Positions 16,202-46,767 of a stretch of 64,000 bases of DNA are shown here, piece after piece. The stretch spans positions 186,001 to 250,000 of IMG/VR virus record IMGVR_UViG_3300005826_000294. One strand, given 5' to 3'. The position numbers and the translations under genes are program-made. How positions within the stretch are numbered: the stretch's first letter is position 1; every line of letters starts with the position of its first letter. A model generated the notes under the pieces. The model saw nothing but the letters and a program-made list of their open reading frames with translations, had not been told where the DNA came from and did no database searches.

Positions 16202-19200
16202 TTAATCAAATAACTTATTAAGTTGCCCAGTTAAATCAACTGAATCACTTGATACTTCACTAAAATCTTCATTAATTCCAACATTTAATGCTGGAGAGGC
16301 AGTTTTAGTAGAAGTTGGTTTAGATACGCGAGCTAAGGCTCTCTTAAAAGATTCAAAACTCTTATCATCAAAATTCATAATCTCATCAACCTGAGCATGT
16401 AATGCAGAAACATCACTAGCAATAAGTTCTTTTTCCTGCATACTTAGAGCAATATCATAAGCTCTACGCATTCTAATCTTTTCTTCATCTAAACTTGCTT
16501 GAACCTTCTTTTTAGTAAACTCTTTAGTAAGTTCTCCACCAAATTCAGAACTCTTCTTATCTCCCTCTCCAAAATAACCTTTCCAATATTTTGCAGCCTC
16601 AGGATCAACAGCAAGTGCCTTTAGTTTTTCAACATTATCAAGTTCATTCATATTAAGTTTTCCAGACTTTAATAAATTACCGAGATGATTCATTGCTTCT
16701 CTTACTTTTGGAAGATTTTGAACCTGCTTTAAAATTTCTTCATGCATCTCTACAATTCCCTCAACAACAGCTTCATTACTATTTATATCAAGCTGTCCAA
16801 GTTGCTGACTTCTACCAATAGGCATATCAGTATCAACGGTTGTCTGAGAATCTAATGAAAGTTGATATTTTGCACCAACCTCAGATGCTACTTTTTCACG
16901 CCATGAACGACGAGCAGAAGCAGACTTACTACACATCTCTTCTTCTTCTTCATCATCAGCCTGAAAATCATCAGCCTGAAAATCATCAAGCATTTGGGCT
17001 AATTCCGCATCTAAAGCATCCATGTCCATATCTTCTGCTTTTTCTTGAAAGATCTCTTCTTCATCAACTTCAAGATTTCCAAGACCATGTTCTTCTTCTT
17101 CCTTTTCCTTAGCAACAAACTTTTCAATTCCACCAAATGGAGAGAAAATCTCATCTAATATTTTTTTAACTTCATCTTTTTTTACTTCATCAATACCAAG
17201 ATCCTCTTCTCCCATAGCTTCTTTAGCAAGTTTACGACGATTATCAGCACGAGCTTTTAAAAGATCTTCTACTAGTAATTCAGCTTTACTCTTCTTGCTC
17301 TTCTTTTCTTCTTTTACTTCTTCCTCATCTTTTTTACTCTTCTTCTTTGGAGGAAATGTTTTCTCTTCCTTATCACTCTTCTTGCTCTTCTTTTCCTCAT
17401 CCTTCTCACTCTTCTTGCTCTTCTTTTCCTCGTCCTTCTCGTCCTTCTCACTCTTCTTGCTCTTCTTTTCCTCGTCCTTTTCACTCTTCTTCTCTTCTTT
17501 ATCACTCTTCTTGGCTTTCTTTGCTTTTACAATTAAAGAAGCCTGACTACGAAGTTCTACACTTGTATCAATAGCTTCAGAGGTTAAACGAAGTAGTTCG
17601 GAAGTAATAGGATCATTAGCACTCTGGCCACTCTTTACACGACCCTCAAGAGACTCGGCAAGCATAGCAAGTTCATCTGCACTTTCATCAAGACCAGAAT
17701 AAAGATCCTTAACATCTTCTTCATCTTCATCATATTCTTCATCATCTGCTTCAGAAATACCAGAAGTATCAAGATCAGCATCCTCACTCTTCTTACCAGA
17801 AAGTTCTTCACAAGCTTTCTCTAGATCACCAAGAGCTTTCTCAACTTCCTCAAGATGCTCGCTGGCGGCACTTAAAGCTGCCTTTACTGGATCTTCATCC
17901 TTATCACTAGGCATTTCTTTTTCATCTTTTGGCTCTGGTAGAGGCATTGGTGCTTCTGCTCCAGGCATAGGTGCTTCTGCTCCAGGCATAGGTGGCATCT
18001 CAGGAGGTGGTTGTGCTTCTTTTGTTAAAGTAATACCTTTAAGATAATATGCTACTTTACCAATTCCATCCTCACGGATTGCACGAAGAACCTCACGACC
18101 CCACTTTTTACTGGCCAAAACTTCCCAATTCTCATTTAATTCATCCTCATAAATCTCTGCTCCAGTAGCCTCAAGAATCTTTTCTGGACCAGCATAAATC
18201 TCCCAACGAGAATTTGGCTTATCAATTATAGTTTTATCTTCATTTTTATAAGCAACAACAAATTTGGCACGAAGCTGAGCACGAAGTAGCTTTTGTTTAA
18301 GAGCTTCTTCATTTCCATAACTTTCATAGCCAGGATGCATACCATCACTTCCAGATTCCATTCCCTGACCTTCCATTTGCTTATCACCCTTAGTTTTCAA
18401 CTGATCATTAGTAGGATCAACTGAATAGGTTTGAGGCTCATTTACACCGCCTCCACCTTGCCAATATGCTTCTTTCTTTGTGGTTTTTCCAACCATCTTT
18501 ACAAGATCTCTCGCATGTTGAATAACAGCATCATCTACAGCCTGCCAAGTTCCATCATTACTTAATGAGATAACAGTACCATCAGGAAGTTTTGCTACAG
18601 TTTTAGCTCCAACTTGTTTTGACTCAAGTTTTTCAGCTTCTTCAGCATTCTTCATAAGAGAATGTCTTGCATTCTTACGTTCATCCAATTCTGCTCTTGA
18701 AAGCATTTTCTTTAGATTTTCCTCTGACTGACCGAAACTATCATACCCAGGGTGGAGGCCCTCGCTTCCAGGCTCCATTCCCTGACCTTCCATTTGTTTG
18801 TCGCCCTTTGTTTTCAGCTGATCATTAGTAGGATCAACTGGATAGGGAGTAGTGGCAGGATCATTTACTCCACCGCCGCCCAAATGATAGGCGCTCTTAA
18901 ACATAGCACGTCGGGCTGCAGCCCTTTCACGAAGCTCTTTTCCAGACATTGATTGCTCCTCCTTGTTTGTTGTAGCTTTCTGGGCACCTGTCGCCATATC
19001 CCGAAGTGCAGTCTCCATAGCGCCCAGTTTTTTATTAATATTTGTAATAGTATTTTCCAAACTCACATTAGCAAGTCTGTTTCCTTCCATAGACCACTCG
19101 GGTGGTCCCGTATCATTTCCCTGTCCTGTATAACCTTTGCCAGTATCTCCCATTTCTGTTGTGCTTTGAGTAGCACTGGCTGGCTCTACTTCAACAGGTT

Positions 19201-20263
19201 TTTCATCAGTTAATAATTTATCTAAAGCTTTAAGTAAATTGTTTCTCGCATCTTCAGATAAATCTGGATTTTGTAATAAAGTATTAACTCTTATTGCTTC
19301 ATCAAGATTTGTGCTATTAAATGAAGCGACTCTATTTATAGCACTATCAAAAGATCTTTTAAGATCTATAAATTCATTTTCTAACCGCTCAAGTTCACCA
19401 GGAGTGACACATCCGGCAGCTCTAAGCATTTGAATTCTATCATTCTTTTCTTCCGAATATTTATTTAAACTCGCAATAACATTTCTTAATTTCGCTTGAG
19501 GATCTGCTCCTGTCACTACCAAACTTAATTCAATAGGAGAGAGATCAATATTTATTTCTCCATAAGTAGTCCTATTACGAACATGATCACAATAATCAGA
19601 TTCTACTTTTGCTATATTACCACATTCATAACATATTGACTTACCAACTGCAGTACCCATAGAAACATTATTAGCATATCCAGAAGAAACTTTTCGTGCT
19701 AAATCAGGATAATTAATTTTATCTAAAGCACAAAGTCCAATTACTCTTTTATATTTATCATCATAATAAGTATCTACAATAATTCCTCTAATTCCATCAA
19801 CAGAAGAACTTTGATGATCTTTACATAAAGGACGACCAATCCATTTACGATATGCTTTTTTTAATTCTGCTTCTGGGAAAATATCCCCATTGTTATTTTT
19901 ATATGGTCTTAAATTTGGATCCGAACATTTCCATTTCCAAGAACCAGTTTTTTTATCTATGATCCATTCAGCTTGAACAGGATTTCCTGAAGCATCCTTT
20001 TTTATTTTACCATCAGAATCAACAAGAGAAGCTTCTGAACTATGAAGCATAATACAACTAAAATAAATAAAATCTTTAGCTCTTGGAGCTACTTTTTTGA
20101 GATTATTAGCAAATTTCTTAAATCTAATTTTAACTTCATTATCAAGATCCGAGATTTCTGGATTAAAAAGGCGATTTTTTAAATTATTTTTTTTATCCAA
20201 AAAACTACTAGAATAAACCTCTTGAAGTGTAAAATTAGATTCAGCAAATTTAATTATTGACAT
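16202..20263 (-). CDS. Prohead (maturation) protease fused to long scaffold-like region
   Basis: GDIF..EL...W...PL..DH, GIIVD, NVSMG, IELSLV..GADP.A motifs of HK97/herpes assemblin-like serine proteases; then low-complexity acidic, Pro-rich and Lys-rich coiled regions. Confidence 0.8.
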   Translation of the reverse strand: MSIIKFAESNFTLQEVYSSSFLDKKNNLKNRLFNPEISDLDNEVKIRFKKFANNLKKVAPRAKDFIYFSCIMLHSSEASLVDSDGKIKKDASGNPVQAEWIIDKKTGSWKWKCSDPNLRPYKNNNGDIFPEAELKKAYRKWIGRPLCKDHQSSSVDGIRGIIVDTYYDDKYKRVIGLCALDKINYPDLARKVSSGYANNVSMGTAVGKSICYECGNIAKVESDYCDHVRNRTTYGEINIDLSPIELSLVVTGADPQAKLRNVIASLNKYSEEKNDRIQMLRAAGCVTPGELERLENEFIDLKRSFDSAINRVASFNSTNLDEAIRVNTLLQNPDLSEDARNNLLKALDKLLTDEKPVEVEPASATQSTTEMGDTGKGYTGQGNDTGPPEWSMEGNRLANVSLENTITNINKKLGAMETALRDMATGAQKATTNKEEQSMSGKELRERAAARRAMFKSAYHLGGGGVNDPATTPYPVDPTNDQLKTKGDKQMEGQGMEPGSEGLHPGYDSFGQSEENLKKMLSRAELDERKNARHSLMKNAEEAEKLESKQVGAKTVAKLPDGTVISLSNDGTWQAVDDAVIQHARDLVKMVGKTTKKEAYWQGGGGVNEPQTYSVDPTNDQLKTKGDKQMEGQGMESGSDGMHPGYESYGNEEALKQKLLRAQLRAKFVVAYKNEDKTIIDKPNSRWEIYAGPEKILEATGAEIYEDELNENWEVLASKKWGREVLRAIREDGIGKVAYYLKGITLTKEAQPPPEMPPMPGAEAPMPGAEAPMPLPEPKDEKEMPSDKDEDPVKAALSAASEHLEEVEKALGDLEKACEELSGKKSEDADLDTSGISEADDEEYDEDEEDVKDLYSGLDESADELAMLAESLEGRVKSGQSANDPITSELLRLTSEAIDTSVELRSQASLIVKAKKAKKSDKEEKKSEKDEEKKSKKSEKDEKDEEKKSKKSEKDEEKKSKKSDKEEKTFPPKKKSKKDEEEVKEEKKSKKSKAELLVEDLLKARADNRRKLAKEAMGEEDLGIDEVKKDEVKKILDEIFSPFGGIEKFVAKEKEEEEHGLGNLEVDEEEIFQEKAEDMDMDALDAELAQMLDDFQADDFQADDEEEEEMCSKSASARRSWREKVASEVGAKYQLSLDSQTTVDTDMPIGRSQQLGQLDINSNEAVVEGIVEMHEEILKQVQNLPKVREAMNHLGNLLKSGKLNMNELDNVEKLKALAVDPEAAKYWKGYFGEGDKKSSEFGGELTKEFTKKKVQASLDEEKIRMRRAYDIALSMQEKELIASDVSALHAQVDEIMNFDDKSFESFKRALARVSKPTSTKTASPALNVGINEDFSEVSSDSVDLTGQLNKLFD
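17330..17520. repeat. Coding tandem repeats (KKSKKSEKDEE-type) in scaffold
   Basis: Repeated tcactcttcttgctcttcttttcctc units. Confidence 0.8.
18330..18895. repeat. Two ~55-aa internal repeats in scaffold
   Basis: AY..GGGGVN.P...Y.VDPTNDQLKTKGDKQMEGQGME.GS.G.HPGY.S.G twice. Confidence 0.85.
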
Positions 20264-22520: not shown

Positions 22521-22751
22521 CTAGAAAGGATCGCCTGTATCAAAAAAGAATGGACTAACAGTCATACCGCCTATTGGTTCCTCTGGCTTTGTATCTCCAC
22601 GTAATCCAACAATATTTACAACGGAACTTACATCGCATTCCTCATTTTCTTCATCTTCGAGTTCAGATAGAATTTGATACACATCCATTGCTGAATGTAT
22701 AAATCCATGACTAATTAACTCATTAAAAAGATTGGAAATTATCTTTTTCAT
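22521..22751 (-). CDS. Hypothetical small protein
   Basis: ATGA overlap with upstream gene; degenerate hairpin tag. Confidence 0.55.
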   Translation of the reverse strand: MKKIISNLFNELISHGFIHSAMDVYQILSELEDEENEECDVSSVVNIVGLRGDTKPEEPIGGMTVSPFFFDTGDPF

Positions 22752-25700
22752 CCAACACCTCCAAATGGTGGAGTCATACTCATAATTGGATTAACATTTC
22801 TAGCAGTATCTAACCATGTTTCATATCTAGGAAAAATATCTTGGAATCCTCTTAATGGTTGATCAGTAGGAGTTGGAACAAAAGCATCTTGTTCTATAAT
22901 TTCAGGGTTTTTATATGGACAATTTTCTATTTCTTCAATTATTTTACGAATTTGTTTTGTATCTACTGGTGTTGGATCTTTTCCCATTTCACTAAACCAT
23001 TCAATTAAATTAACAAAAAAATCCTTAAAACCATATGCCTTTGCTTCTAAATAAGCATCTTTATTGCTCCATCCACCTTCTGTTCTAAAACGGGCTATAA
23101 CCCCTCCTGTTCTATCTGCTCCAAACCAACAATGAATATAAGTAGGTTTTTCTAATAATAATTCAGATATTCTATCTCCAAGTATCTTTCTTCCATAATC
23201 CTCTGATGATCCAGTTTCTATTGGAGCAGGAATATGATCCATGCCTATTTCTCCACACATTCTTCCAATTTCAGGATTATTATGTAAAGAAATAACACGC
23301 TCTACCCCCATATCTTTAAGGGTCTGTAATTGTTCTAAATTATCAATCATTCCACCACGGTATAATTTTTTAGGAACCACAATTCCAAAATTTCTTGGAA
23401 GTTTGTCAAATTTTCCTAATTTTGATAATGTTTTTCTATCTAATTTTCCGGTAGGTTTTAATCCATTAATAACCTGTAAGCAAGCAAGATTGAGAACTTC
23501 ATCCTCAGATATACATTTTGAATTTAACATTCCAATTAATTTAATAGCTTTTGTATCATTTATAGCTTTTTTATTAAACTTTATCGCATCTTTAATTTCT
23601 AAAATAACGGGATGAATTACAGGATCCATAAAAAGATCTATTCCTTTTTTTACTATATCATATTTTTTATTTAAAGCACAATATGTTGTAAATTCTAAAT
23701 CTGGTTCCGTCATTGATTCAGCAGGAAAATATTTATTTCTAATTTCATCTAATTTAAGACTAGCATCAATAGCCATATTTGGGAAAAGACCAGTCATATG
23801 TCTTTTAGTTTCTGCTTCTGTTTCAGATTCTCCTTTAAATCTATGACTAGGATTAATAATTTGTTCTGGATTTTTTTCTGGACCAATATGAACTCCCTCA
23901 TGAATTAAAGTTTCTACTAATGCTTTTTCTGTAGCTTGTTCTAATTGTTGAGCATTTGGTTGAGTAGATCCAAACATTCTCTTTACTTGTTCATTAATAC
24001 GATTTTTAAATATATGAACTTCTCTAGGATCTTTTCCAGGACCCATTTCTACATGCCCGAGTTGTCCAGGGCCTCCTTCAGGATGAACAATTATCTTTAT
24101 AATATTATTTTTTATATGAGGTGGAAGTTTAGCCAAAGCTTTTGCTACAGCAGTATCATATGGTTCTATAAGTATTTGAGCCCCTGGTGTTTTTACTTCT
24201 AAATCTTGAGCATCTTTGATAAAATACTTATTTATCCATTCAGCTCTTTCTTCAGGATCCATTTCTTCCATAATATCAATCTCATACAAAGTCATTTCAG
24301 ATCTTTTACGCTTTGGTTTGTTCTTTTTTTCTTTTTCTATTTGTTTTGCTAAATTGTCCCAATATTCTTCAAAGCCTTTCATCTCTTCATCATTGAAACC
24401 CTCAAATACTTCATCATGATCTTCATTAGCTCGTTTTGATAATTTAAAATTTGCTTGTTTTTTACCAAGATCAATCTCAGCAATTTTATCACCGCCAGCA
24501 AAAAATACTACATTTTTTGCCTTCCATTTTGGTAATTTTTCTAATGAAGGTAGTTCGACATTATAATCATCAATATAACCAATAGTTATATGAGGAACCC
24601 ATCCATGTTCCGATGGTAAATCAATAATATTACTAATAGCATCTTGAAGATCATTCTGTAAAGCATTTAATCCAACAGAATTAGGAATAAAAAATATTGG
24701 AACTCCATCATCTCCCTTAGAAAACATTCCTGTTCCCGCTATATACATAGATAATGGTTTATGATGAGAACATACTTTTTCAACAGATTTTATTATTGCT
24801 TTTCTTGTTATATTATCAATATCTTTTGCTTTTCCAAGATAAATAAGAGTTATATGTAATCCATCAGAACTTACACCTTCACCAATAAATTTATTTAACT
24901 TTTTAGGAACCATAATAGCAATCATAGCACCAGTATGTTTTTCTTTTGCTATTTTCAATAACTCTTCTTCATTATATCTATTTTTCCAAAATGAAAGTTT
25001 ATGCTCATCTTCTTCGTTTCCCCATAACAGAAGTTCTTCTTTAAGAGATGCTACTTTTCCAGATGATAAATATGTTTCTATTGTATTAGGAAGAATGTAT
25101 TGATTTTTTAGAGTACTTGGTTGGTGCCCTAGGTCTTTTGAAACATTTTCCAAAGCATTATTAAGTTCTTCCTTTAATTTTTTCTCCTTTTCTTTTTCTT
25201 CTTTTGGAAGAGTTCCTTTTCTTTGCTTTTTTAATTCTTTTTTTAACAAACTATTTGCCTCAGCACCACGAATATCTTTTGCAGTAATCTTAAATTTTTT
25301 CAAATACTTATTAACCATTTTTGGTGTAATTGTAAAAACTTTATCACCCTTTTTTTTATCTTTTATTAACTCTTTTAAAGCACTAACAGTTTCTTTATTA
25401 TTAACAATTTTTTCCTGATCTACACCAGATTTGCCGACATACTTAATTTTCGCTTTTCCACCAGAAAAAGTTATATGCTTAACTAACCAAGTTGTCACAC
25501 CATAATGTTTTCTTTCATCAGCAGAAAATTCATTACCAATTCTTTCTTTTGTATCATAAATTAAAGAAACAGCAATAGCAATCTGCTTGATTTCATCATC
25601 ATCAGATTTTAAATCTTCTTTAATCTTTTTAAGCAAATCAGAAACATTTTCTTCTAACTGTTTTATTTTCTTTTCTTTTTTCTTCCAACGCCTTTTTACC

Positions 25701-25801
25701 CACTTTTCATCATAAATATATGTAATGTTTCCACTTTCTTCTTCTCTTTTTTCAACATAATTTTTTGCTCGTTTTGAAAGATAAAACATATTAATCTCCA
25801 A
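22748..25801 (-). CDS. Multi-domain enzyme: topoisomerase IB core + 2H phosphoesterase + HExxH + PG-binding + Cys-dependent (Tyr/dual-specificity) phosphatase (likely start 25789)
   Basis: RIGN, YVGK, AKDIR, LGH, QY (TopIB catalytic set); HITL and HITI; LIHEGVH; GLKPTGKLDRKT; HCWFGADRTG. Confidence 0.85.
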   Translation of the reverse strand: MEINMFYLSKRAKNYVEKREEESGNITYIYDEKWVKRRWKKKEKKIKQLEENVSDLLKKIKEDLKSDDDEIKQIAIAVSLIYDTKERIGNEFSADERKHYGVTTWLVKHITFSGGKAKIKYVGKSGVDQEKIVNNKETVSALKELIKDKKKGDKVFTITPKMVNKYLKKFKITAKDIRGAEANSLLKKELKKQRKGTLPKEEKEKEKKLKEELNNALENVSKDLGHQPSTLKNQYILPNTIETYLSSGKVASLKEELLLWGNEEDEHKLSFWKNRYNEEELLKIAKEKHTGAMIAIMVPKKLNKFIGEGVSSDGLHITLIYLGKAKDIDNITRKAIIKSVEKVCSHHKPLSMYIAGTGMFSKGDDGVPIFFIPNSVGLNALQNDLQDAISNIIDLPSEHGWVPHITIGYIDDYNVELPSLEKLPKWKAKNVVFFAGGDKIAEIDLGKKQANFKLSKRANEDHDEVFEGFNDEEMKGFEEYWDNLAKQIEKEKKNKPKRKRSEMTLYEIDIMEEMDPEERAEWINKYFIKDAQDLEVKTPGAQILIEPYDTAVAKALAKLPPHIKNNIIKIIVHPEGGPGQLGHVEMGPGKDPREVHIFKNRINEQVKRMFGSTQPNAQQLEQATEKALVETLIHEGVHIGPEKNPEQIINPSHRFKGESETEAETKRHMTGLFPNMAIDASLKLDEIRNKYFPAESMTEPDLEFTTYCALNKKYDIVKKGIDLFMDPVIHPVILEIKDAIKFNKKAINDTKAIKLIGMLNSKCISEDEVLNLACLQVINGLKPTGKLDRKTLSKLGKFDKLPRNFGIVVPKKLYRGGMIDNLEQLQTLKDMGVERVISLHNNPEIGRMCGEIGMDHIPAPIETGSSEDYGRKILGDRISELLLEKPTYIHCWFGADRTGGVIARFRTEGGWSNKDAYLEAKAYGFKDFFVNLIEWFSEMGKDPTPVDTKQIRKIIEEIENCPYKNPEIIEQDAFVPTPTDQPLRGFQDIFPRYETWLDTARNVNPIMSMTPPFGGVG

Positions 25802-29463: not shown

Positions 29464-32400
29464 CTATTCCAGATCTTTTCTGCGTTCTTTATCTATTCTA
29501 GAAGCATCCATTTGTTTTTTATTTAAAATAATTGCTTTAATATTTTTTTTATTTTGAAAAACAGCCTTAGATAATCTATGATAACCATCAATTAATTTAC
29601 CTTTATATAATAATATTGGATAATTAAGAGAGACTTCTTTAATTCTTTTGAACTCTTCTTTATATTTCTTTGGATTATCTAATACAATTTTAGGAGTTAT
29701 ATTTTTACCCCAAGCATTATGATCCATATTCCATTCTAATGAATTAACAGACACATCTTCAGGTTTAATATTTTCAGTCAGTTCAATTAACATATCAACA
29801 GACCATTCTCCACTATCACTAGTATATGTTTGACCTGCTCTTTTAGATAATTTAAAATCAGCATTAGATTCTTTATATTCCATAATCATCCATTTATTTC
29901 CATCTGTTTTAAATAAATTATAAGTTCCTTTTTCTTTTTTACCATTTAATTTAAATACTATTTTGTTTTTAGTTGAACTTATCTCTTCATATGTGCCAGA
30001 ATCATGAATTTTTACATCACCTGATCCATAATTTCCTTTTTCTATTTTCCCTTCAAATTTATTATATGAAATAGGATGATTTTCAGTTTTCACAGCGAGC
30101 AATCTTTCTTTTCCATTTGGCAATTTATGTTTAGGAACAGCCCAAGAAGACATAGATCCTTCATCATTTTCCAAACGCAAATCATAATGATTTCCAGCCT
30201 TTAAAGCCTTATGATTTTGAATTACAAAACGATGTTTGTTTTTTTCTTCAAGTTTTCCTTCAGGTTCAGGTGTTTCATCAAAATTTCTTTTTTTCTTATA
30301 TTTTGATAGTGAATCAGCTCTTTTACTTAATTTAAAAGAAGACTTTTTCTTTAATTCTTCAAATCCTCTAACTAAATCTTCCATATATATTAACATTTCT
30401 TCTGGATCATCACCATAATTTTGAATATCCTCAAAGAACTCTCTAAGAAGTGCCTCGGACTCTGGATCTATATCTTTCTGATTCATAAGAGCACCGACCT
30501 TAGAAAAAATTTGATGATGCGTATCACTCTTATTTCTAATATTTCTAATATTAACAACAGGTTCTGGATTATATTTCCCAGGCATAATAAGAGCTTGAAC
30601 TAAAGCATATTCTCCAATTCCAAAAGAAGTATCATCATTATTAAGAGCAACATGATAAAAATCACTATACATAATCTCACCAGAAAGATTTTCATTAGGA
30701 TTTCTTTTAGCATATTCAACAAGTTTATTATTTAATGGAACAGGAGCAGTCCCATTTACCCAATTTGGATTGGTAATAAACTTCATATATCCAGGTGGTA
30801 TTTTCCAAAGACCAATAAATTTAAGAACTTTTGGTCTTATAGACGTATGAGATCTTAATGGTTGTTTTTTAGGATTACTTCTAGGAAGAGAAAAATCACT
30901 TCCACTTGGTGGTTTATAACTTCTATATGGATTATAAGAAGTAGATTCATGATGAGCTGGAACTAAATTACATTTAAAACCAAATGAAAGATCATCCTCA
31001 GAAATTTGATCTCCAATCTTAGTAATAAAGAAAGTTCCTGGACCATTTCCATAAATCCCATCTATTTTTTGATCAGATAAAATATCTTCCATATGATAAT
31101 ATTCAAACCAATCATCACGAGATTCCATCATCTTAGAAACCCAAGAATGAAGAGCTGGAATATAAACATTATCTACTTTATCTTTTGTTGTAATTTTTTC
31201 TGTAATATTCTTTTGTTCTATATTTCCATCTTTATCTGCTATAAAACCACTATTTATATTTATATCACCTAACCATGATATAAACATACCTGGATCTAAA
31301 TGAGATGTTTCTCCTAATGTCTCATACATAGAAAGAACACGTTGTTTTGATCCATTAATTTTTGATTTTTCTATTTTTTTAACAATTTCAGTAATTGGTT
31401 TCCCAAAATTTCTTTGAATATCAATTTGTTTAGAAAACCAATCATTATAGGAATTAATAGCAATTTTATGCTGATCATTAAATATTTTTGCCCCTAAGAC
31501 AGATAAATACATCATTGTTTTTTGTGTTAAGTTCTGTCTCATATTCGCTTCTTGATCAGCTTCAATTCCTCCTAATCCTTCTTCTTCTTCTACACCAAAT
31601 TCTTCTTTTCCTACTTGGTCCCACTTCATATGTTGCCAAGGTTCCCAAAAATATCCACCTTTTCTATTTAATCCTTTTCCTCTAGCACTTCTTAATGTAA
31701 ATTTTACATAATCATGCGGACAAATAAAAGGAACATCTAATAATTCATCAGGAGGAATTCGTTGAGGTAAAATGTTAGGTAAAGATTCATCTTCAGCACT
31801 CTGAGATGAACCTACAACAATACCAAATCTTTTTTGTAAAACTACTATTGCTTTCGCACCAGCTTCTGTTTTCCAAAATTCATGATTACGATCTAAAGCG
31901 GTCATTGGAACTCTATTTCCTGGGCATCCTGAATTCGGACACCAAGTGTGCCAATATGGAACTGGTTCAGACTGAACTTGTAAACTATATTGTTTTTTTT
32001 CTAAATTATTAAGATCAAGTTTTGAATGCCTAATATCAGTACTAAGAGATATAATAGATTGTTCATATTTTCTCTTTTTATCTTCAAGTTCTGGAGTTTG
32101 ATTTTCTCCTAATTGTTCTATAACTTCATTTAATTTTTCTTGTAATTTAAAAACATCATTCTGTTTTCTAGACACATAATTTTCAAGTTTGGTAATTTTA
32201 TCTTTATTTTCTTCATATACTCTTTTACAATCTTCACAATACCAACGTTTTACAGGACCTTTTTCTTTAGAAGGGACCATAGCATTATAAAAAACATCCT
32301 TACTTTGTCTTTTTTGTTTTCTTGATTTACAATAAGCACAAACAGGAATTCTTACTTCTTTATATCCCTTATCTTGTGCTATAATTTTAGATATTCTTCG

Positions 32401-35400
32401 TGATAATGATTTATATATATATCCACCAAGTGGAACACTCCCGCGAGGAGGATCAACTCTATATCCAAATGAAAAATAAGTATTTGCGAGGTCTGTGATT
32501 GCTTCATTAATTAAAGAGATATATGCTTTTGAACTTGGAAGATCTGTTATAGGAATACCTTTTATCAATAAATCAATATCTCCTTGATCAAACATGCCGA
32601 AAGGCATACTACCGACATCTCCTTTTCTACCAAGTTTTAATTGAGAACTATTATTATCAAACCATTTCTTTCCAACACCCATAATAATTGCTGGAAGAAC
32701 CCATTTTTGTGCTATTTCAGGATTTTTTTTTAATTCTTCCCAAGCATACGGATCTTGGAAAAGTTTTGTTAAAGAAGGTCCATCTTTCATATTATCTGGA
32801 GAAAATAAATCTTTGGCATTAGCAGACATAACTGGACGCTTAATTTCCTCAGAATTAAACCATCTACTTAATACTACTCCATCTTTATCTCTAGGAGGTT
32901 CTAACTTTTCTCCAAAAATGGGAATTTTTTCTTTTGTATCTTCTTCTTCGTCTTCTTCCTCTTCTTTATATTCAGAAAGAGCTTCTCCCCATAAATCTTC
33001 CTTTTCTTCATCTCCAAGGAGATCAGAAAAATCAACATCTTTTTTTTCTTCAACTTCTTCAATTTCTTCTGGTTTTACAACTTGTTTAAATCCAAAATAT
33101 TCAGGTCTCTTTTTTTTTAAAACTTCTTCCTGTTTTTTTTCAACTTCTTCCTGTTTTTTTTCAACTTCTTCCTGTTTTTTTTCAGGAACACTTTCTATAA
33201 ATTTATCAAGTTTTTCCTGCTCAGTTTCAATCTCTTCTGGTTCTTCCTCTTGAAACTCAGGATTTTGTTCTAAAAATTTCTTAACTTCTTCATCATCCTG
33301 ACTCTCAGCTATTTTCCATAATTGTTCAAGATTAATTGGACTTTTTTTTACAGATGTTTTTAATAAATTGTTTGAAATTATATGTATTAAATTTTCTGTT
33401 TGATCTTTAATAGATGTAAATATATTTCCAGATTTTTCTACTGGCAATCCTGTCCAAATTCCATTTGCCCTTTTAACTTTACCCACAACGTCTGGATTTC
33501 CTGTAATTTTTAATCCAGAAATTATATTTGATTCTGCACCTAATAAAACAGCATTATTAATCATACCTATTGGTTTGTTTTGTTTAACAAAACTTTTTAA
33601 TAAATCTTTGACTTCTTTGTTTTTAGAAAAATTACAAACATCTTCCCCGCCACATACAATAAGGGCATCATATTGTTTAGTATTAATATCTTTTATTTTT
33701 TTCGAATTTATTAATGTTCCTTCAACACCCTCAACAACATTAAAAGTAGATATAATATGTGATTTAAACCCATATTTATTTATAAATATATTTTGTGTAA
33801 TTAAGTATTCTTTTTCAGAACACCCTGTTGGAGGAACCAAAATTGCTATTTGAGCAAATTTAGCATTAAGCATTTCGATAAATTCTGGATCAGGTTCATC
33901 AAAACCCATCCATCTTCTTTTCTCCATATGCTTTTCTAATTGACGTTCTTTTTCATTTGACTTCCAGGCATCGGCTTTCCATTCGGAAGATGGCCAATCA
34001 ATTTGTTCAAACTGAAAATTTTTTATTTCATTTTCTTGAAGTATATTATTAAATCCTTTTTTTACAACATTAGGCAAATCTTGTAGATTTTTTTCACCAT
34101 AAAATTGTATATCTGCTGGTTCATCACCTTTATATATAAATATTCTTCCCCGCCATCCTTCATTAGTTATTTGTTTTATATTATTATGTTGTGCTAATTC
34201 AATATGACCAAAATATTGTTTCTCACGCTTTCCATTGTTTATATTAAGATGATATGTAAATTTATTATTAATTTCATCCCATAACCATATATATTCTTTA
34301 TTTATTTTAGACGCTTTTAAATAAGCTTTCTTTGAAATAAAATCATCTGCCGCATTATATGCTCCTTGCTGACTATATGGTTCTTGACCTTGAGATGGAG
34401 CAACTTGTATAATATTTCCCTCTGGAAATGGAATATCTCCATAATCATATTTATTTTCATGTAAAGGTGCATTATTATAATTGTTTTCTGCTGTGTCTTG
34501 TTCTCCACCTAAAATTTTTTTAATGTTCCCATTGTTTTCTCCAAATGACTCAGGAACACGAATACTACCTTTATTATGTAGAGTGCTCACATCAGATCTC
34601 ATTCCACTTCCTTTAACAACACCAGTAGTCACATCTTCCCATTTTTCATTTAAATTTGTTAAAAGATCTTTTAATTCTTCACGCAATTTATCTATGGATA
34701 TTTCACTCTTCAATTTAAACTCTACATGAATACCAGATCCTCCACTTTGAAAAATTGTAGGAGTAGTCCCATATTTCTCTTTTAATTTTGAAGATAATTC
34801 TCTAGCATATTTTTTAGCTTTTTCTAATGGATAATTACCATGAATATCTAAATCCACGAAACCAAGATCTGTTTTGTTTCCAAATACCTGGTGAAAAGAC
34901 AAAAGACGCCGTTTAACCCAATAAAAATAATTATTAGGGTTTTCATCATTATTAGGATTATCATTAGTTATTACTATTTCTTTATCATTATGATTTCTTT
35001 TTAATATGGTTTTATTTTTCCCAACTCCAAGATAAATTAATACAGGCTTCCCTTTAATACGAGACATTATTTTCTTTCTTACTTCTGGTTTTTCATAATG
35101 TTTCCTAATTTCTCCACGAGTTAGTTTTTTGTCTTTATCAATTAAAACTTCCGACATTTTTTCTTTATCATCATCGGCAGAACTTATATTAATTGGTTCA
35201 AATTCAATAATGACAAATCTTTTATCTGGACCAAAACGATCTTCTAAAGATTTAGCCATTCTTTCACCATATGCTTTATTTATTCTTGTGATACTCATAA
35301 CTCTTTTAGTAATTATCTTAATATCAGCAATATTAGCTCCAGAATAACTTTTACATTTAACTTTATCATCAGGATTTACATTAACATCTCCTGGCCTAAT

Positions 35401-39833: not shown

Positions 39834-42800
39834 TTATACTCCTGCTCCAGGTCCAAGAGGTGGTGGAGTCATTCCGCCACCTTCAGCACCACCACCGCCT
39901 ACCATTTCACCAGGTGGTGGTGCTAGTTCAGGAAGACCACCAGGAGCCACTCCACCCATTCCTCCCGTTCCTCCCATTCCTAAATCTCCACCAGCTTCAG
40001 GAGGTGTCATTTGACTCCTTTCTTTACTATCAATTGGTTCCATAATAGGCTTCTCAGGATCAAGAGATCTTAATTCTGTTAAACTCATTCCAGATAAAGA
40101 GTTTTCTTCTCTCATTTTTATTGCCTTATCAATTGCTTCTCTTCTCATTTTTATTTTTTCATCTTCATAAGATATTCCCAAACTCTTATAAAGAGATTGA
40201 ACAGAAGCCTGCCCAGCACTAACCATTCCTGTTATATTACTAATATAATCCTGTAAATCATATAAATTCATTTGGTTCCATTCAATTTCTGGAACAATTA
40301 AATGTTTTTCTTTATTCCTGTATTCATAGAAACCTTGAATTTCACTAATGGGAGCAAATATCTTATTTATAAGCCATCTAGCAATCATATTACGAAAATT
40401 AAAATATCTTTGTCTTAAAACTTCTAATCCAATTGATGCTGAAGAGTATACAGCACTTTCAGTATCTATAACTGCAGGGGGAACCATTAATCCTGTATAA
40501 ATATTTTTAGTAATAAATTCAAGATCACTAGCAATATCTAATACTTGACCAGAAAATCCTACCCTCTCTACAGTTACACCAGCATGAGTTATAATTTTAG
40601 CATCTTTATCATATTGCGCTTCTTCAAACATTTGTCTATAAAACTCTAAATCTTCTTGAGTTGCCCTATATTCTCCTTCAGTATTTCCACCAACTTTAAT
40701 TAGTGTAACAGGATTAATCATACCATCTGCTTGAGCAAATTTGCTATTTCCCTGGATAGTCATTAATCCATTATTTCTAGTGATAAAAAGACCATTTGAA
40801 ACTTCAAAACAAAATACCCTTCCATTATAAGGAATTTTTTCAATTGAAGCTCCATTGTAATTATTATTTCCATAAATTACTGGTTCTTTTCCATAATTTG
40901 AATCAGACCAAGTAATTAAATAAAATTCTTTACCATATCCATTTTTATCTACTATTAAATGAGGAGCATATCCACACTTAAATACTATCTCTTGAATATC
41001 ATCAGCAAGCCTCTTTGAAATAGTATTATAACGATATGCTGTTGATCCATTTTTATATTTACTTTCAATCTCAGAACCATCCCCTTTAACCAAAGCATTT
41101 AATAATATTTTTAACAATCTTGGAGACAATTGCTTCGTCCAAAAAGGAACATGTTTATTTCCAGAACCATATCCTATTTCATTCATAAAATGTTCAGCAA
41201 TTATTTTTCTAGAAATAGACCAAGTTGTAATATCATTGTTAGATGAATATCCTTGTTTATTTGCCGAAACATATTCTCCACAATGTAAATTAAGCATATC
41301 TGCTATTTTTATTATAGATTTTTTAATATACTTATAATCCTTAGAGTTGTTATTTTGGCATATACTAATTTTATAATTTTGAGTTTTATTATTATAATGA
41401 ATACAACCTTCAGAAATCATATATCCAAGAAATTCTAAATAGTCTTCTATAGGAATTTTTTGATCAAATAAATTAATATTAGATATTTCTTTTCCCACAT
41501 ATTTATCAATAGAGGCTTTTGATTTATAAAAACATCCTTTTTTAACATCCTCAGCTCTTACAAACTGAAAATCATTATATCCATTATAATGTGTCTTTTT
41601 CTTCGCTAACCACATTCTATGATTTGGAGTAACCATAATATCTATTTTTTTTCCATAGAAATGATATAATTCTCCATTAAATTCATAATCCGTACGATTA
41701 ATATATTTTTGAAACTCTAATTCTCCAGTTTCTTGATTCATTGTTGCTATTTCATCGTTTTTAGAAATATCATCATAAAACTTAAAACCATCTTTTGTCA
41801 ATACCTCAGTAGATACCGGGAAACATTCTCTTAACTTATCATAAAGCATTAGGTCTTTAAAAACGCTAACAATAATACTTGTTCCTCTTACATCATATGG
41901 ACTTGATAATATTTTTAAATGGGAAATGTTAAAATTATCTAATGGAATATCTTGTCCTGCTCTAATATGATATAAAATTTTCTCTGGGATTTGTTTTCTA
42001 AGTTGAGAATCAGCAGGATTATTGCTAAACACTAATCGTTGAAGAACAGCATCAGGTTTTAATGTAATAATAGGATCACCAGAGAGAACCGTCTTTTTAA
42101 CATGAACATAATCAGGATTTTGTATTACAATTTTTGACCATTTTCCTGTATTTTCATTAAGTTCGGCAAATGGAAAACAATTATGTACTGCCACTCCATT
42201 TGCCACATATGAATGATCATCTTCAACTTCAATATCATACATAAAGTTTTCATTAAATTTATTAGTTATATCTTCAACTTTCTTTATACTTAACATTTGC
42301 CAATTTTTATAAAGACTAGAATTAGGAGAACACCATTTTGTCTCTCTTAATAAATCATTCTTATTAGTTTTTAAATATGTTTTAAATTTATATGATTCAT
42401 TCGCAACTATCTTAATTCTATATTTATCAGATATATTATCTTTAGCATTAATTTTTGAACAAGTTGGATGAATACCTAATCTTCTTAACATAAGTGTAAA
42501 CTGATTAGCAAGATTTTTGGAAGAAGTAGAAATAATAATATGACCATTGCTTTGATCAATACAACCATCACCATCTATAAAACCAGCTAATAAATGTTTT
42601 TGTAATTCAATAGGCAAAGACATTATTGTCTCGCTTAATTGTTTTTCTTTACTATATTCTCCACAATGCTCCATAAAAAACTCTGCTATTTTATGACCAT
42701 TGCGTTTTTTACTTCTTAATAAATGATCACATTTATTAGAGTTTCTACTCACATATGTTGTTCCAGAAAATCCAAAACATTTTTTTAATAAAGGAGAAAG

Positions 42801-44042: not shown

Positions 44043-44053
44043 ACTATACTCCT

Positions 44054-45892: not shown

Positions 45893-46767
45893 TATTTTCC
45901 CCATTTATATACAACTTTAAATCCAGCGTCTTCAAAAATTTTAAGCTTTTTTATAGTATTGTCATATAATTCTCCAAAAGTTTTTCCAATTATAGGATGT
46001 TTATCATTTCTATTGTATTTATCTGGATGTCCATGCCAAAAGTATCCAAAATATTCATAAATAATATTGTTTGTTTTATCAAACCCATCAACAAAAAATT
46101 TTTTATTGTTAATATTAATATAAACTTCTGTTTGAATAATTCCAATACTTTCAATCCATTTTTTACCTGATTTTGATATTCTTTTAGAACATAAAGAACA
46201 TCCTCTTCCACGAACTCTATCTTTTATTTTCGCTATCCATTTATGATTATTTTTACATTTCCAATGGACTACTTTATGACTTCCAGGTCTTACAGAATCA
46301 GGTTTAAAATTTTTTTCATCCCATTCTTTTGATAAAGTAGGATATAAATCTTTTAAAGAATTCCCATATCCTACTTTTCTACCATTACAATAAGGACAAT
46401 TACTATTTTTTCTATGTTTTACAGATTTTTCCCAAGAATGCCCAAATTTACATTTCCACCATACTTTTTTATAACTTCCTGAACTAATACATTCAGGATC
46501 AATAATATTTTTATCATAATCCCACTCTTTTAATAAATTACTATAAATTATTGAATCTTCTTTGGAAATTTTTACTCTAGTACAGTATGGACAACCATGG
46601 CCTTTGATTCTACTATAAACAATTGCTTCCCATTTATGATTGTTTTTACAAATCCATTTAATTCTTGATCTACTAACTAAAGATGTTATATCATAATTAT
46701 TACTTAAATCATATTCTTTTAATAGTTCAGGATATTCATTTAAGTTTATCATTAATTCTTTGAACAT
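45892..46767 (-). CDS. Free-standing putative endonuclease: three DUF4379-like repeats + Vsr/EDxHD-like nuclease
   Basis: KEWD...W.C...H.W...CP.C; VDGFD....IYEYFGYFWHG. Confidence 0.75.
   Translation of the reverse strand: MFKELMINLNEYPELLKEYDLSNNYDITSLVSRSRIKWICKNNHKWEAIVYSRIKGHGCPYCTRVKISKEDSIIYSNLLKEWDYDKNIIDPECISSGSYKKVWWKCKFGHSWEKSVKHRKNSNCPYCNGRKVGYGNSLKDLYPTLSKEWDEKNFKPDSVRPGSHKVVHWKCKNNHKWIAKIKDRVRGRGCSLCSKRISKSGKKWIESIGIIQTEVYININNKKFFVDGFDKTNNIIYEYFGYFWHGHPDKYNRNDKHPIIGKTFGELYDNTIKKLKIFEDAGFKVVYKWGK

What the first reader, a model, noticed from the sequence alone, without database searches (positions are those of the whole stretch)
22748..25789. Topoisomerase IB - 2H phosphoesterase - HExxH - PG-binding - phosphatase fusion in the head cluster
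Seen: full TopIB catalytic set (R, K, R, H, Y; ~25070-25600), two HxT motifs (~24578-24865), HEGVH (23888..23902), PG-binding-like motif (~23400-23490), HCWFGADRTG P-loop (23105..23134). No single pathway uses all five; with the K-x-A boundaries it looks like a second cargo polyprotein (DNA relaxation on entry, nucleotide/RNA end processing, proteolysis, dephosphorylation).
Basis: partly seen in the sequence, partly recalled or inferred. Interest (0 to 1): 0.7.

Follow-up and report, generated by a model that had tools for sequence, protein, structure and literature searches.

The report
Phage head-module multi-enzyme polyprotein
A 1013-residue gene in the head-gene block of a roughly 300-kb phage strings together a DNA topoisomerase IB, a 2H phosphoesterase, a small zinc protease and a tyrosine-type phosphatase, joined by a conserved short peptide (F-x-L-S-K-R-A) that marks module borders in related phages, so it is most likely a cut-apart enzyme package delivered with the phage DNA.

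Summary
One ORF (22748-25789, minus strand) encodes four well-supported domains. TopIB: Pfam E 4e-29, catalytic R87/K124/R178/H226/Y235, invariant in 44 relatives. 2H phosphoesterase: E 6e-12, two HxT motifs. Zincin-fold HExxH domain: AlphaFold model, Z 10.2 to PDB 3e11. Dual-specificity phosphatase: HCx5RT, profile E 6.5e-7 to TpbA. The peptidoglycan-binding call is weak and below threshold.

In relatives, 77 instances all lie between modules, which are reshuffled. Eleven related loci show the same gene order.

I read it as a phage "polyvalent protein" (Iyer 2017): a head-module multi-enzyme polyprotein, probably packaged and cut at the junction peptide. Packaging, cleavage and the responsible protease are inferred, not shown. 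It is a new variant of a known kind, because TopIB, the phosphatase and the junction peptide are not in that survey.

The parts
22748..25789 (-). Whole gene, 1013 aa from ATG 25789 (115.6 kDa); stop codon at 22748-22750
   Evidence: P0002, 100% identity, 1013 aa; GGAG before the ATG
25766..25786 (-). N-terminal junction peptide F-Y-L-S-K-R-A (residues 6-12 of P0001, 2-8 from the ATG)
   Evidence: (PSSM 24.7 bits). Fifteen homologues start with the same peptide.
25037..25765 (-). Topoisomerase IB module (residues 13-255): catalytic R87, K124, R178, H226, Y235. Most of the N-terminal DNA-binding domain of bacterial and poxviral TopIB is absent.
24950..25036 (-). 29-residue linker between TopIB and 2H. 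No junction peptide here; relatives P0011, P0010 and P0014 have one directly before the 2H module, and in P0011 it separates TopIB from 2H.
24449..24949 (-). 2H phosphoesterase module (residues 285-451): H316-I-T318 and H404-I-T406
24428..24448 (-). Internal junction peptide F-K-L-S-K-R-A (residues 452-458)
   Evidence: (23.9 bits)
24188..24427 (-). Acidic-then-basic helical module of unknown function (residues 459-538), shared with P0004-6, P0008, P0015, P0017 and P0020. It ends in F-I-K-D-A, a decayed junction.
23732..24187 (-). Minimal zincin-fold metallopeptidase module (residues 539-690): H634-E635-x-x-H638, with invariant downstream E658 and E662; the third metal ligand is not assigned.
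   Evidence: Z 10.2 to 3e11; pLDDT 88
23402..23731 (-). Helical module (residues 691-800). Its last helix-loop-helix resembles the second half of PG_binding_1; this is weak.
22967..23401 (-). Dual-specificity (cysteine) phosphatase module (residues 801-945): P-loop H890-C891-x5-R897-T898
22751..22966 (-). Conserved C-terminal tail (residues 946-1017) of the form P-T-D-x-P ... W-x-D-T ... N-P-x-M-S-x-T-P-P. It is present in relatives with or without the phosphatase and is unique in this genome.
29464..38019 (-). Neighbouring 2851-aa polyprotein: ATP-dependent DNA ligase (101-286), weak LigD primase-polymerase (1049-1132), DJ-1/PfpI (1390-1538), LigD 3'-phosphoesterase (2601-2704), ParB-like end module (2727-2838). 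It has three F-K-L-S-K-R-A junctions at 36763-36783, 30316-30336 and 29836-29856.
16202..20263 (-). 1353-aa conserved neighbour with a prohead-protease-like stretch (residues about 123-233). It is a candidate for the cutting enzyme and carries no junction peptide itself.
   Evidence: (PHROG head maturation protease, E 1.9e-13)
39834..45904 (-). Portal gene (39834-44042, with two inteins) and large terminase gene (44054-45904). These define the head-gene block.

Best explanation
The gene encodes a phage 'polyvalent protein': several unrelated enzymes made as one chain from the head-gene block.

Most likely course of events (inferred):
- The chain is made late and loaded into the capsid.
- It is cut at the junction peptide F-x-[LI]-S-K-R-A.
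- It is released into the host cell together with the roughly 300-kb DNA.

In this phage two junctions are intact. One sits at the very N-terminus, like the short T4 capsid-targeting propeptides. The other follows the 2H domain. Cutting there would give a basic TopIB+2H fragment (about 51 kDa, pI 9.4) and an acidic fragment of about 64 kDa holding the zincin, helical module, phosphatase and tail.

Proposed roles (inferred):
- TopIB relaxes or unlinks the incoming genome without ATP, as the packaged poxvirus enzyme supports early transcription.
- 2H plus the cysteine phosphatase open 2',3'-cyclic phosphates and remove end phosphates on damaged nucleic acids, or destroy nucleotide alarm signals. 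They would work beside the ligase and 3'-phosphoesterase of the neighbouring polyprotein.
- The zincin is the processing protease. My split is zincin about 0.45, the prohead protease in the 1353-aa neighbour about 0.35, and no cutting (the peptide is only a docking signal) about 0.2.

Shown: the domains and their catalytic residues, the junction peptide and its restriction to module borders, module shuffling, and conserved gene order.
Inferred: packaging, cleavage, timing and substrates.
For: Domains.

Junction peptide:
- The five strongest PSSM hits in the genome (23-26 bits) all lie in this ORF and the 2851-aa neighbour. Six hits reach 12 bits, against 0.6 in shuffled proteins.
- The serine and leucine codons differ between copies, so selection acts on the peptide, not on a DNA repeat.
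- In 36 homologues, 0 of 77 instances fall inside module cores, although the cores cover 58% of residues. Fifteen instances are at N-termini.
- The peptide region is flexible in the model: block-mean pLDDT 55 for residues 1-10 and 71 for residues 11-20, against above 90 for most of the domain.

Shuffling: TopIB, 2H, ParB-like, zincin, CCA-adding enzyme, SET and other modules appear in different orders between junctions.

Base form: proteins of about 500 aa holding only zincin+helical+phosphatase+tail; four of the six examined begin with [LI]-S-K-R-A within their first few residues and a fifth has a degraded form.

Context:
- The order giant polyprotein, small ORFs (a DUF6897 gene where Pfam calls exist), this gene, about 1 kb of small ORFs, then a 1310-1416-aa (or end-truncated) protein recurs in ten related loci besides the window.
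- TerL and the portal lie just upstream.
- In another huge phage (LR745208) a HAD+TopIB fusion sits directly after the portal gene.
- The nearest cultured-phage relatives of the 2H module sit inside a large head-module protein between the portal and the major head protein.

Precedent: polyvalent proteins with a zincin hub, 2H and ParB domains in phages with portal-terminase packaging (PMC5512222); T4 targeting propeptides and giant-phage ejection-protein processing (PMC5694885); vaccinia virions contain TOP1 and DNA ligase, and the same paper's reference list includes work on VH1 release from lateral bodies (PMC6336343).
Against: - There are no proteomic or expression data, so packaging and cleavage are inferred from context only.
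- The junction peptide is absent from every other ORF of the genome, including the putative protease-bearing ORF; the capsid gene could not be identified. A general prohead-protease site would be expected on more head proteins.
- Two relatives (P0020, P0028) sit in a different neighbourhood beside thymidylate kinase, ThyX and an amidase, with no recognisable head genes within 10 kb.
- Junctions can decay without the gene being lost: here F-I-K-D-A before the zincin, where relatives have LSKRM, LSIRH or LSKKA.
- In several relatives only 1-2 residues separate the peptide from the first strand of the zincin. That makes self-cutting in cis unlikely there.
- The complex prediction of zincin with the junction peptide gave no answer.
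- The TopIB module lacks most of the N-terminal DNA-binding domain, so its activity may differ from known enzymes.
Confidence: 0.55

Rival explanations
1. It is an intracellular repair and anti-defence polyprotein that is never packaged. The chain is made during infection and cut into separate enzymes that work in the producing cell: TopIB in replication or recombination of the huge genome, and 2H with the phosphatase in RNA repair. The position among head genes is incidental.
For: TopIB is described as a stand-alone replication-type enzyme in some jumbo phages such as PaBG (PMC7824862). The PaBG gene lies beside thymidylate kinase. Relatives P0020 and P0028 also lie beside nucleotide-metabolism genes. 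The 2H, HAD and phosphatase 'Swiss-army-knife' Pfam families come from RNA-repair systems.
Against: Gene order within the head block between the portal and the protease-like ORF is conserved in ten related loci besides the window, and a TopIB fusion follows the portal directly in LR745208. The short conserved N-terminal peptide resembles capsid-targeting propeptides. The 2H relatives in Gordonia phages sit inside head-module proteins.
Confidence: 0.2
2. It is packaged but not cut. The F-x-L-S-K-R-A peptide is a docking or capsid-targeting signal that each once-separate gene carried at its N-terminus. Internal copies are what remains after gene fusions.
For: Fifteen instances sit at N-termini, where there is almost nothing to cut off. 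Some ORFs end just after the peptide, as in P0029 and P0030, as expected if genes fuse and split at these points. Some internal copies have decayed. N4 virion RNA polymerase is packaged unprocessed although it contains a zincin domain (PMC5512222).
Against: Internal copies are as strictly conserved as N-terminal ones: four of the five copies here read F-K-L-S-K-R-A with different codons. That argues for continuing selection on internal sites. A protease domain is the most constant module of the family.
Confidence: 0.15
3. It is a polymorphic toxin or effector of the MuF type, used against competing bacteria or phages rather than for the phage's own infection.
For: A constant part with variable enzymatic modules is the pattern of polymorphic toxins. 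One weak Pfam hit is to a polymorphic-toxin phosphatase family (Tc-R-P, E 8e-4).
Against: No MuF, portal-fusion, immunity-gene or secretion-related domain was found. The modules (TopIB, ligase, CCA-adding enzyme, superoxide dismutase) are repair or housekeeping enzymes, not typical toxins. The genome is a lytic-style huge phage with no toxin-immunity pairs next to the gene.
Confidence: 0.05
4. It is an assembly or gene-calling artefact: separate genes joined by a sequencing error or a lost stop codon.
For: The genome is a metagenomic record estimated at about 75% complete. Homing endonuclease genes interrupt the region.
Against: The frame is open for 1013 codons. An identical protein is on record. 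Independent contigs carry the same or similar fusions, for example P0009 with TopIB-2H-zincin-phosphatase-tail and P0011.
Confidence: 0.02

Closest known systems
Polyvalent proteins of phages and conjugative elements (Iyer, Burroughs, Anand, de Souza, Aravind 2017, PMC5512222)
   Same: Both have many unrelated domains in one chain and are encoded beside portal-terminase packaging genes. In both, a zincin-like metallopeptidase is the recurrent hub, proposed to process the chain. 2H and ParB-like domains occur in the phage type.
   Different: The paper mentions a topoisomerase only in its reference list and has no occurrence of the word 'phosphatase'. It has no occurrence of 'linker' and a single, unread occurrence of 'cleavage site'; none of the passages shown describes a junction peptide. 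This zincin matches no Pfam family. Here the borders are written in a defined seven-residue peptide.
T4 internal proteins and Alt with capsid-targeting propeptides; phiKZ and SPN3US ejection proteins cut by the prohead protease (PMC5694885)
   Same: Both have short conserved N-terminal peptides on head-internal proteins, multiple cuts within one chain, a protease gene in the same block, and products ejected with the DNA.
   Different: Their sites end in glutamate ([LI]-x-E or [SAG]-x-E) and also occur on the capsid and portal proteins. Here the peptide is basic (S-K-R-A) and limited to two ORFs. Cleavage is proven there and not here.
Poxvirus virion enzymes: type IB topoisomerase (H6R), VH1 dual-specificity phosphatase, DNA ligase (PMC6336343, PMC11980589)
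   Same: The same three enzyme types travel with a large dsDNA genome. The TopIB catalytic pentad is the same, including the H-x8-Y spacing.
   Different: In poxviruses they are separate gene products, and TopIB has its full N-terminal domain. Similarity to variola and vaccinia TopIB is low (E 3.6e-6 and 1.2e-4). Any functional parallel is an analogy.
Bacterial TopIB (Deinococcus radiodurans, PDB 2f4q)
   Same: It is the best solved-structure match (E 2.6e-11 over residues 7-250), with all five catalytic positions aligned.
   Different: The alignment starts at residue 55 of the bacterial enzyme, so most of the N-terminal domain is missing. The phage module is always embedded in larger fusions.
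RNA-repair 'Swiss-army-knife' proteins (Pfam 2H-SAK, PTP-SAK, HAD_SAK_1; mentioned for jumbo phages in PMC7824862)
   Same: Both combine a 2H phosphoesterase with a cysteine phosphatase. HAD_SAK_1 is fused to TopIB in the second clade.
   Different: The matches to the SAK models are below cut-off here (E 0.065 and 0.0021). No kinase or RNA ligase lies in the same chain.
Minimal zincins: Zincin_1 (PDB 3e11), selecase, Wss1/SprT, YbeY
   Same: The compact fold is the same: helix, three-stranded sheet, an HExxH helix and a Glu-bearing helix.
   Different: Sequence identity to these structural matches is low, at most about 21% (3e11), and Foldseek E-values are weak. The extra conserved motif G-Q-L-G-H-V-E is specific to this clade.

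Membership tests
Type IB topoisomerase (Pfam PF01028) | Profile match above the curated cut-off | tested here: met
   101.9 bits against a cut-off of 23.7, E 4.4e-29
Type IB topoisomerase (Pfam PF01028) | Catalytic pentad Arg-Lys-Arg-His/Asn-Tyr in order | tested here: met
   R87, K124, R178, H226 and Y235 align with 2f4q and are invariant in 44 homologues
Type IB topoisomerase (Pfam PF01028) | N-terminal beta-sheet DNA-binding domain of bacterial and poxviral enzymes | tested here: not met
   The alignment begins at residue 55 of 2f4q and residue 64 of 2h7f. Only about 30 residues precede the catalytic domain.
Type IB topoisomerase (Pfam PF01028) | Relaxation of supercoiled DNA through a 3'-phosphotyrosyl intermediate | not testable with these tools
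   Needs an enzyme assay
2H phosphoesterase superfamily | Two H-x-T/S motifs in a duplicated fold, with a profile match | tested here: met
   H316-I-T318 and H404-I-T406. 2_5_RNA_ligase2 scores 46.2 bits against a cut-off of 27.
Zincin-like metallopeptidase (the polyvalent-protein 'MPTase') | HExxH on a helix plus a downstream Glu-bearing helix | tested here: met
   H634-E635-G-V-H638. E658 and E662 are invariant in the family (columns E120 and E124 of A1).
Zincin-like metallopeptidase (the polyvalent-protein 'MPTase') | Fold: N-terminal helix, three-stranded sheet, two C-terminal helices | tested here: met
   Models at pLDDT 81 and 88. Z 10.2 and rmsd 2.6 A to 3e11; the following rows are YbeY, Wss1, selecase and aminopeptidase N catalytic domains.
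Zincin-like metallopeptidase (the polyvalent-protein 'MPTase') | Match to a curated sequence family | tested here: not met
   No Pfam zincin family at E up to 1 in any of 13 members. The PDB profile search found none.
PG_binding_1 (Pfam PF01471) | Profile match above the cut-off over the three-helix domain | tested here: not met
   12.5-14.4 bits against a cut-off of 23, covering only profile positions 38-57. hhalign probability is 5%.
Dual-specificity / cysteine phosphatase | P-loop H-C-x5-R-S/T | tested here: met
   H890-C891-W-F-G-A-D-R897-T898. C, R and T are invariant in 14 homologues.
Dual-specificity / cysteine phosphatase | Profile similarity to solved members | tested here: met
   The family profile matches TpbA (2m3v E 6.5e-7; 4r0s E 1.2e-6), At1g05000, Siw14 and DUSP23. 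Y_phosphatase3 is just over its cut-off.
Dual-specificity / cysteine phosphatase | General-acid Asp on an upstream loop | tested here: inconclusive
   No invariant Asp could be assigned from alignment A2. No structure model was made for this module.
Polyvalent proteins (Iyer 2017) | Two to fifteen functionally disparate domains in one polypeptide | tested here: met
   Four enzymatic domains plus three other modules
Polyvalent proteins (Iyer 2017) | Encoded among late or packaging genes of a phage with a portal-terminase system | tested here: met
   TerL and the portal lie 14-20 kb upstream on the same strand, and a protease-like ORF lies 2.5 kb downstream. The same order recurs in ten related loci besides the window.
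Polyvalent proteins (Iyer 2017) | Delivered into the host with the DNA | not testable with these tools
   Needs virion proteomics or infection assays
Prohead-protease-processed head proteins (T4 / phiKZ type) | The same cleavage motif is shared with other processed head proteins (major capsid; portal in giant phages) | tested here: not met
   The motif is found only in this ORF and the 2851-aa ORF. It never occurs in the 1310-1416-aa neighbour in ten loci.
MuF / SPP1 gp7 head-morphogenesis fusions | MuF domain in the same chain | tested here: not met
   No MuF-type family appears in the Pfam or PHROG scans

The most novel reading that the evidence does not exclude
Huge phages of this clade use a short peptide 'punctuation mark' (F-x-[LI]-S-K-R-A; a second clade uses S-R-V-A-A-K/R-Y) to build interchangeable enzyme cassettes. 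The cassettes are loaded into the capsid as polyproteins, cut apart by a dedicated minimal zincin carried in the same chain, and injected with the genome. TopIB is the commonest passenger, so these phages bring their own DNA-relaxing, end-healing and ligating kit into the cell, much as poxvirus cores do. The peptide would then be a transferable loading and processing tag.
Probability: 0.3. Interest if true: 0.8.

Novelty: new variant of a known kind. Interest (0 to 1): 0.6.

Why it matters
If the reading is right, three things follow.

- It gives a concrete, sequence-readable rule for where phage polyvalent proteins are divided. The 2017 survey proposed processing by the zincin domain but, as far as I searched it, gave no such site.
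- It adds topoisomerase IB and a cysteine phosphatase to the enzymes that phages may carry in the particle. TopIB appears here as a hub fused to more than a dozen partner enzymes: SET, CCA-adding enzyme, superoxide dismutase, phosphoribosyltransferase, PAPS reductase, HAD and others.
- It makes the first minutes of a huge-phage infection testable. Does the incoming 300-kb DNA need relaxing, end repair and ligation by proteins brought along?

A short loading-and-cutting tag would also be useful for packing foreign proteins into capsids, as the T4 targeting sequence has been.

Tried and rejected
- megablast of the gene against 50,697 phage records found no match.
- Pfam prohead proteases S77 and S78 and the HK97 capsid family gave no match in the genome. 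The capsid gene and the protease type stay unidentified apart from a PHROG hit and a language-model lead.
- PDB sequence-profile search with the zincin+helical alignment gave only chance-level hits. The fold search was needed.
- Foldseek against PDB and AlphaFold DB clusters gave only weak E-values (0.16 and 1.9e-3), although the names were consistently zincins.
- Complex prediction of the zincin module with the 25-residue junction segment returned 'no answer' (score 0.02). It is not evidence either way.
- I modelled the junction peptide together with the zincin (P0010:187-352) to see whether it docks in the active site. The tool returns confidence and secondary structure but no coordinates, so the test shows only that the peptide region is flexible.
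- A literature search for the string LSKRA with 'phage' found nothing relevant.
- PG_binding_1 was tested three ways and stays below threshold.
- A link between the Wss1/SprT-like fold and removal of trapped TopIB from DNA was considered. I did not adopt it, because the zincin occurs in base-form proteins without TopIB and the Wss1 similarity is generic to small zincins.
- A DNA-level repeat or recombination site at the junctions was rejected, because the codons differ between copies.

Full report
**1. What is in the sequence**

The window comes from a 301,683-bp virus record with about 29% G+C. CheckV estimates it at about 75% complete. All long ORFs lie on the minus strand.

The finding is one uninterrupted ORF. 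The ORF listing starts it at a TTG at 25801. The ATG at 25789 has GGAG seven bases upstream and follows the stop of the preceding gene by one base. The database copy of the protein also starts there and has 1013 aa (P0002). Residue numbers below are those of P0001, the TTG version; subtract 4 for the ATG version.

**2. The five domain calls**

- **TopIB.** Pfam Topoisom_I scores 101.9 bits, E 4.4e-29, over residues 40-234. The best solved relative is Deinococcus radiodurans TopIB (2f4q, E 2.6e-11), followed by an entry titled 'DNA topoisomerase I' (6z01), a topoisomerase I-like protein (2b9s) and the DNA topoisomerase 1 entries 2h7f and 1a41. R87, K124, R178, H226 and Y235 occupy the catalytic positions and are invariant in 44 aligned homologues. 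The module is short at its N-terminus: the alignment begins at residue 55 of the bacterial enzyme and residue 64 of 2h7f. Most of the N-terminal DNA-binding domain is therefore missing. This holds for the whole family, where the module always starts right after a junction.
- **2H phosphoesterase.** 2_5_RNA_ligase2 gives E 6.2e-12. The H-I-T motifs are at 316-318 and 404-406.
- **HExxH.** No sequence family matches. Two AlphaFold models built on family alignments (pLDDT 81 and 88, pTM 0.82 for the second) give a helix, a three-stranded sheet, a helix carrying H634-E-x-x-H638 and a helix carrying invariant glutamates. An exhaustive structural alignment puts a predicted zincin-like metalloprotease first (3e11, Z 10.2, rmsd 2.6 A over 95 of 114 residues). 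YbeY, Wss1, selecase, deuterolysin and aminopeptidase catalytic domains follow. The ESM Atlas and AlphaFold DB searches return Zincin_1, DUF4344, ImmA/IrrE, M48, WLM and SprT types at modest scores. It is a zincin fold of a clade of its own.
- **Phosphatase.** H-C891-W-F-G-A-D-R897-T is a canonical cysteine-phosphatase loop. The family profile hits the Pseudomonas dual-specificity phosphatase TpbA (E 6.5e-7), then plant and yeast atypical DSPs and DUSP23. More than a thousand cellular DSP-like proteins match this part at E of 0.001 or better.
- **PG-binding.** Only the last 20 positions of the 57-position Pfam profile match. Scores are 12-14 bits against a cut-off of 23. Seven of 13 relatives hit, best E 0.0023. 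The region is helical and confidently modelled, but the call is not established.

**3. The junction peptide**

- In the whole genome the exact string L-S-K-R-A occurs five times. Two copies are in this ORF (F-Y-L-S-K-R-A at residues 6-12 and F-K-L-S-K-R-A at 452-458). Three are in the 2851-aa ORF 3.7 kb upstream, all reading F-K-L-S-K-R-A.
- A position matrix built only from other phages' copies scores these five at 23-26 bits. The next hit in the genome scores 13.5. Shuffled proteins give 0.6 hits at 12 bits or more, against six observed.
- The copies use different codons, with Ser as TCA, AGT or TCT and Leu as CTT or TTA. The peptide, not the DNA, is conserved.
- In 36 homologues, none of 77 instances lies inside a recognised module core, although those cores cover 58% of the residues. 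Fifteen instances lie within the first 15 residues and one at the extreme C-terminus.
- In the model that includes a junction in front of the zincin, the block holding most of the peptide has mean pLDDT 55 and the next 71, with no secondary structure. Most of the domain is above 90.

**4. Module shuffling and the constant core**

An architecture table shows the same modules in different orders between junctions. They include TopIB, 2H, an acidic module, a ParB-like module, a large module with the motif T-G-R-G-W, the zincin, a second zincin type, a CCA-adding enzyme with HD domain, and SET. TopIB is also found fused to superoxide dismutase, a phosphoribosyltransferase, a PAPS-reductase-like domain and HAD phosphatases.

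A search of 1.8 billion representatives with the C-terminal half (zincin to tail) finds only 34 clusters at E below 1e-30. Several are proteins of about 500 aa consisting of just zincin, helical module, phosphatase and tail; four of the six examined begin with [LI]-S-K-R-A within their first few residues. That is the constant core of the gene. TopIB, 2H and the acidic module are additions at its N-terminus in this phage.

The C-terminal tail (P-T-D-x-P ... W-x-D-T ... N-P-x-M-S-x-T-P-P) is kept even in relatives that lack the phosphatase (P0011, P0016, P0023-25). It is unique in this genome. Its role is unknown; a capsid-anchoring or loading peptide is my speculation.

In the closest relatives the junction just before the zincin forms a decay series: LSKRM, LSIRH, LSKKA, LKKGA, LVKSA, and here F-I-K-D-A. 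Sites are evidently gained and lost.

**5. Context**

On the coding strand the order is as follows:
- large terminase (44054-45904)
- portal (39834-44042, interrupted by two inteins)
- a 508-aa ORF
- the 2851-aa polyprotein (DNA ligase, weak LigD primase-polymerase, DJ-1/PfpI, LigD 3'-phosphoesterase, ParB-like end module)
- a DUF6897 protein
- homing-endonuclease genes
- this gene
- 76-aa and 207-aa ORFs
- two more endonuclease genes
- a 1353-aa ORF

Residues 123-233 of the 1353-aa ORF match PHROG 'head maturation protease' (E 1.9e-13). Its nearest named neighbours by language-model features are S78, S77 and S80 prohead proteases, at scores of 0.86-0.88, which is only a lead.

The same order, without the endonucleases, recurs in a 460-kb contig (L001), a 54-kb contig (L005) and seven IMG/VR contigs of 23-442 kb. 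It runs giant polyprotein, small ORFs (including a DUF6897 gene in L001 and L005, where Pfam calls exist), this gene, about 1 kb of small ORFs, then a 1310-1416-aa protein (cut off by the contig end in L005). In those loci the junction peptide occurs in the giant ORF, in this gene, and at the N-termini of a few small ORFs beside them. It never occurs in the 1310-1416-aa protein.

Other context points:
- In an unrelated 485-kb uncultured phage (LR745208) a HAD+TopIB fusion lies directly after the portal gene and before an acidic, scaffold-like ORF. Its border peptide is of a second type, S-A-R-N-V-A-A-K-Y, seen throughout a second clade as S-R-V-A-A-K/R-Y.
- The closest cultured-phage relatives of the 2H module lie inside an 859-aa head-module protein of Gordonia phages, between the portal, a head-morphogenesis gene and the major head protein.
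- Two relatives (P0020, P0028) sit elsewhere, beside thymidylate kinase, ThyX and an amidase.

**6. Interpretation**

The features match the 'polyvalent proteins' described by Iyer and colleagues. These are large phage or plasmid proteins that combine many conflict-related domains and are encoded beside packaging genes. A zincin-like peptidase is the commonest hub and is proposed to divide the chain, and 2H and ParB-like domains occur in the phage type (PMC5512222). In that paper the word 'topoisomerase' occurs only in the reference list and 'phosphatase' does not occur at all.

The short conserved N-terminal peptide, together with identical internal copies, recalls two known systems. One is the T4 capsid-targeting propeptides that end in the gp21 cleavage motif. 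The other is the multiple cuts in phiKZ and SPN3US ejection proteins (PMC5694885).

I therefore think the chain is loaded into the prohead, cut at the junctions and ejected with the DNA. The enzymes then act on the incoming genome and on host countermeasures:
- TopIB relaxes DNA.
- 2H and the phosphatase resolve cyclic and terminal phosphates or degrade nucleotide signals.
- They work beside the ligase and 3'-phosphoesterase of the neighbouring polyprotein.

Vaccinia cores offer a parallel. They contain a type IB topoisomerase and a DNA ligase, the VH1 dual-specificity phosphatase is reported to be released from the lateral bodies, and VH1 is needed for early transcription (PMC6336343; PMC11980589). 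This is an analogy, not homology of the systems.

**7. What remains open**

Nothing here shows packaging or cleavage directly.

The cutting enzyme is undecided. The zincin is the only protease domain in motif-bearing proteins and the most constant module. However, in some relatives it starts only 1-2 residues after the peptide, which argues against cutting in cis. The prohead-protease-like ORF is always nearby, but the motif is absent from other ORFs. The complex prediction was uninformative.

The peptide could also be a docking signal without cleavage. The acidic module, the helical module and the tail have no assigned function. The truncated N-terminal domain leaves the DNA-binding mode of this TopIB uncertain.

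**8. Verdict**

The gene is a new variant of a known kind, the phage polyvalent protein. Its distinguishing features are TopIB as the hub passenger, a cysteine phosphatase, a private clade of minimal zincins, and a defined junction peptide that makes the polyprotein idea directly testable.

Noticed in passing
window 39834-44042 (-): The portal gene (1402 aa) appears to carry two inteins. One has a LAGLIDADG homing endonuclease (Intein_splicing and LAGLIDADG_3, residues about 236-640). The other is a Hint-only mini-intein (residues about 724-860). The portal-like ORF of L005 also has a LAGLIDADG hit.
   Followed up: partly
window 25791-27233, 28270-29133, 20908-21750, 20274-20918, 12815-13966, 4774-5712, 45892-46767 (all -): The head-gene block is peppered with free-standing homing-endonuclease genes: HNH, endonuclease VII-like, five DUF4379 treble-clef fingers, and LAGLIDADG. 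The syntenic loci L001 and L005 lack them, so they are recent insertions.
   Followed up: partly
window 29464-38019 (-): The 2851-aa neighbour combines an ATP-dependent DNA ligase, a weak LigD primase-polymerase match, DJ-1/PfpI, a LigD 3'-phosphoesterase and a ParB-like module. That is most of a bacterial NHEJ LigD kit inside a head-module polyprotein. About 2100 residues between junctions 415 and 2564 are largely unassigned.
   Followed up: partly
P0038-P0050; L006; L008 5464-6990: A second clade of TopIB fusions uses a different border peptide, S-R-V-A-A-K/R-Y, sometimes in runs of three. It fuses TopIB to HAD_SAK_1, superoxide dismutase, a phosphoribosyltransferase and another HExxH type (I-H-E-L-x-H-R-Y). 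L006 has two TopIB-containing ORFs in tandem and a Trypsin_2 gene nearby.
   Followed up: partly
window 28270-29133 (-): This 287-aa ORF joins an endonuclease VII / HNH-like N-terminal part to a C-terminal stretch (186-269) that matches PHROGs annotated as Srd anti-sigma factor and 'decoy of host sigma70'.
   Followed up: no
window 9294-12458 (-): This 1054-aa ORF has a genuine PG_binding_1 match (E 5e-7, residues 702-731) and endolysin-type PHROG hits (596-738). It may be a virion-associated lysin.
   Followed up: no
P0029 and P0030 C-termini; L005 9663-10001 and 14695-15840; L014 8143-8526: Some ORFs stop two residues after a junction peptide (…L-S-K-R-E-Q stop, …L-S-K-R-M-I stop). Small neighbouring ORFs begin with the peptide. 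Genes therefore seem to split and fuse at these points.
   Followed up: partly
L001 9980-10001: The called start of P0013 (653 aa) is probably too far downstream. The open frame continues upstream to M-F-Y-I-S-K-R-A, the same N-terminal peptide as in the window's gene.
   Followed up: yes
window 22751-22966 (-): The conserved C-terminal tail is kept across relatives regardless of the enzyme modules and is unique in the genome. It has no match to any known family. It might be a loading or anchoring peptide.
   Followed up: partly
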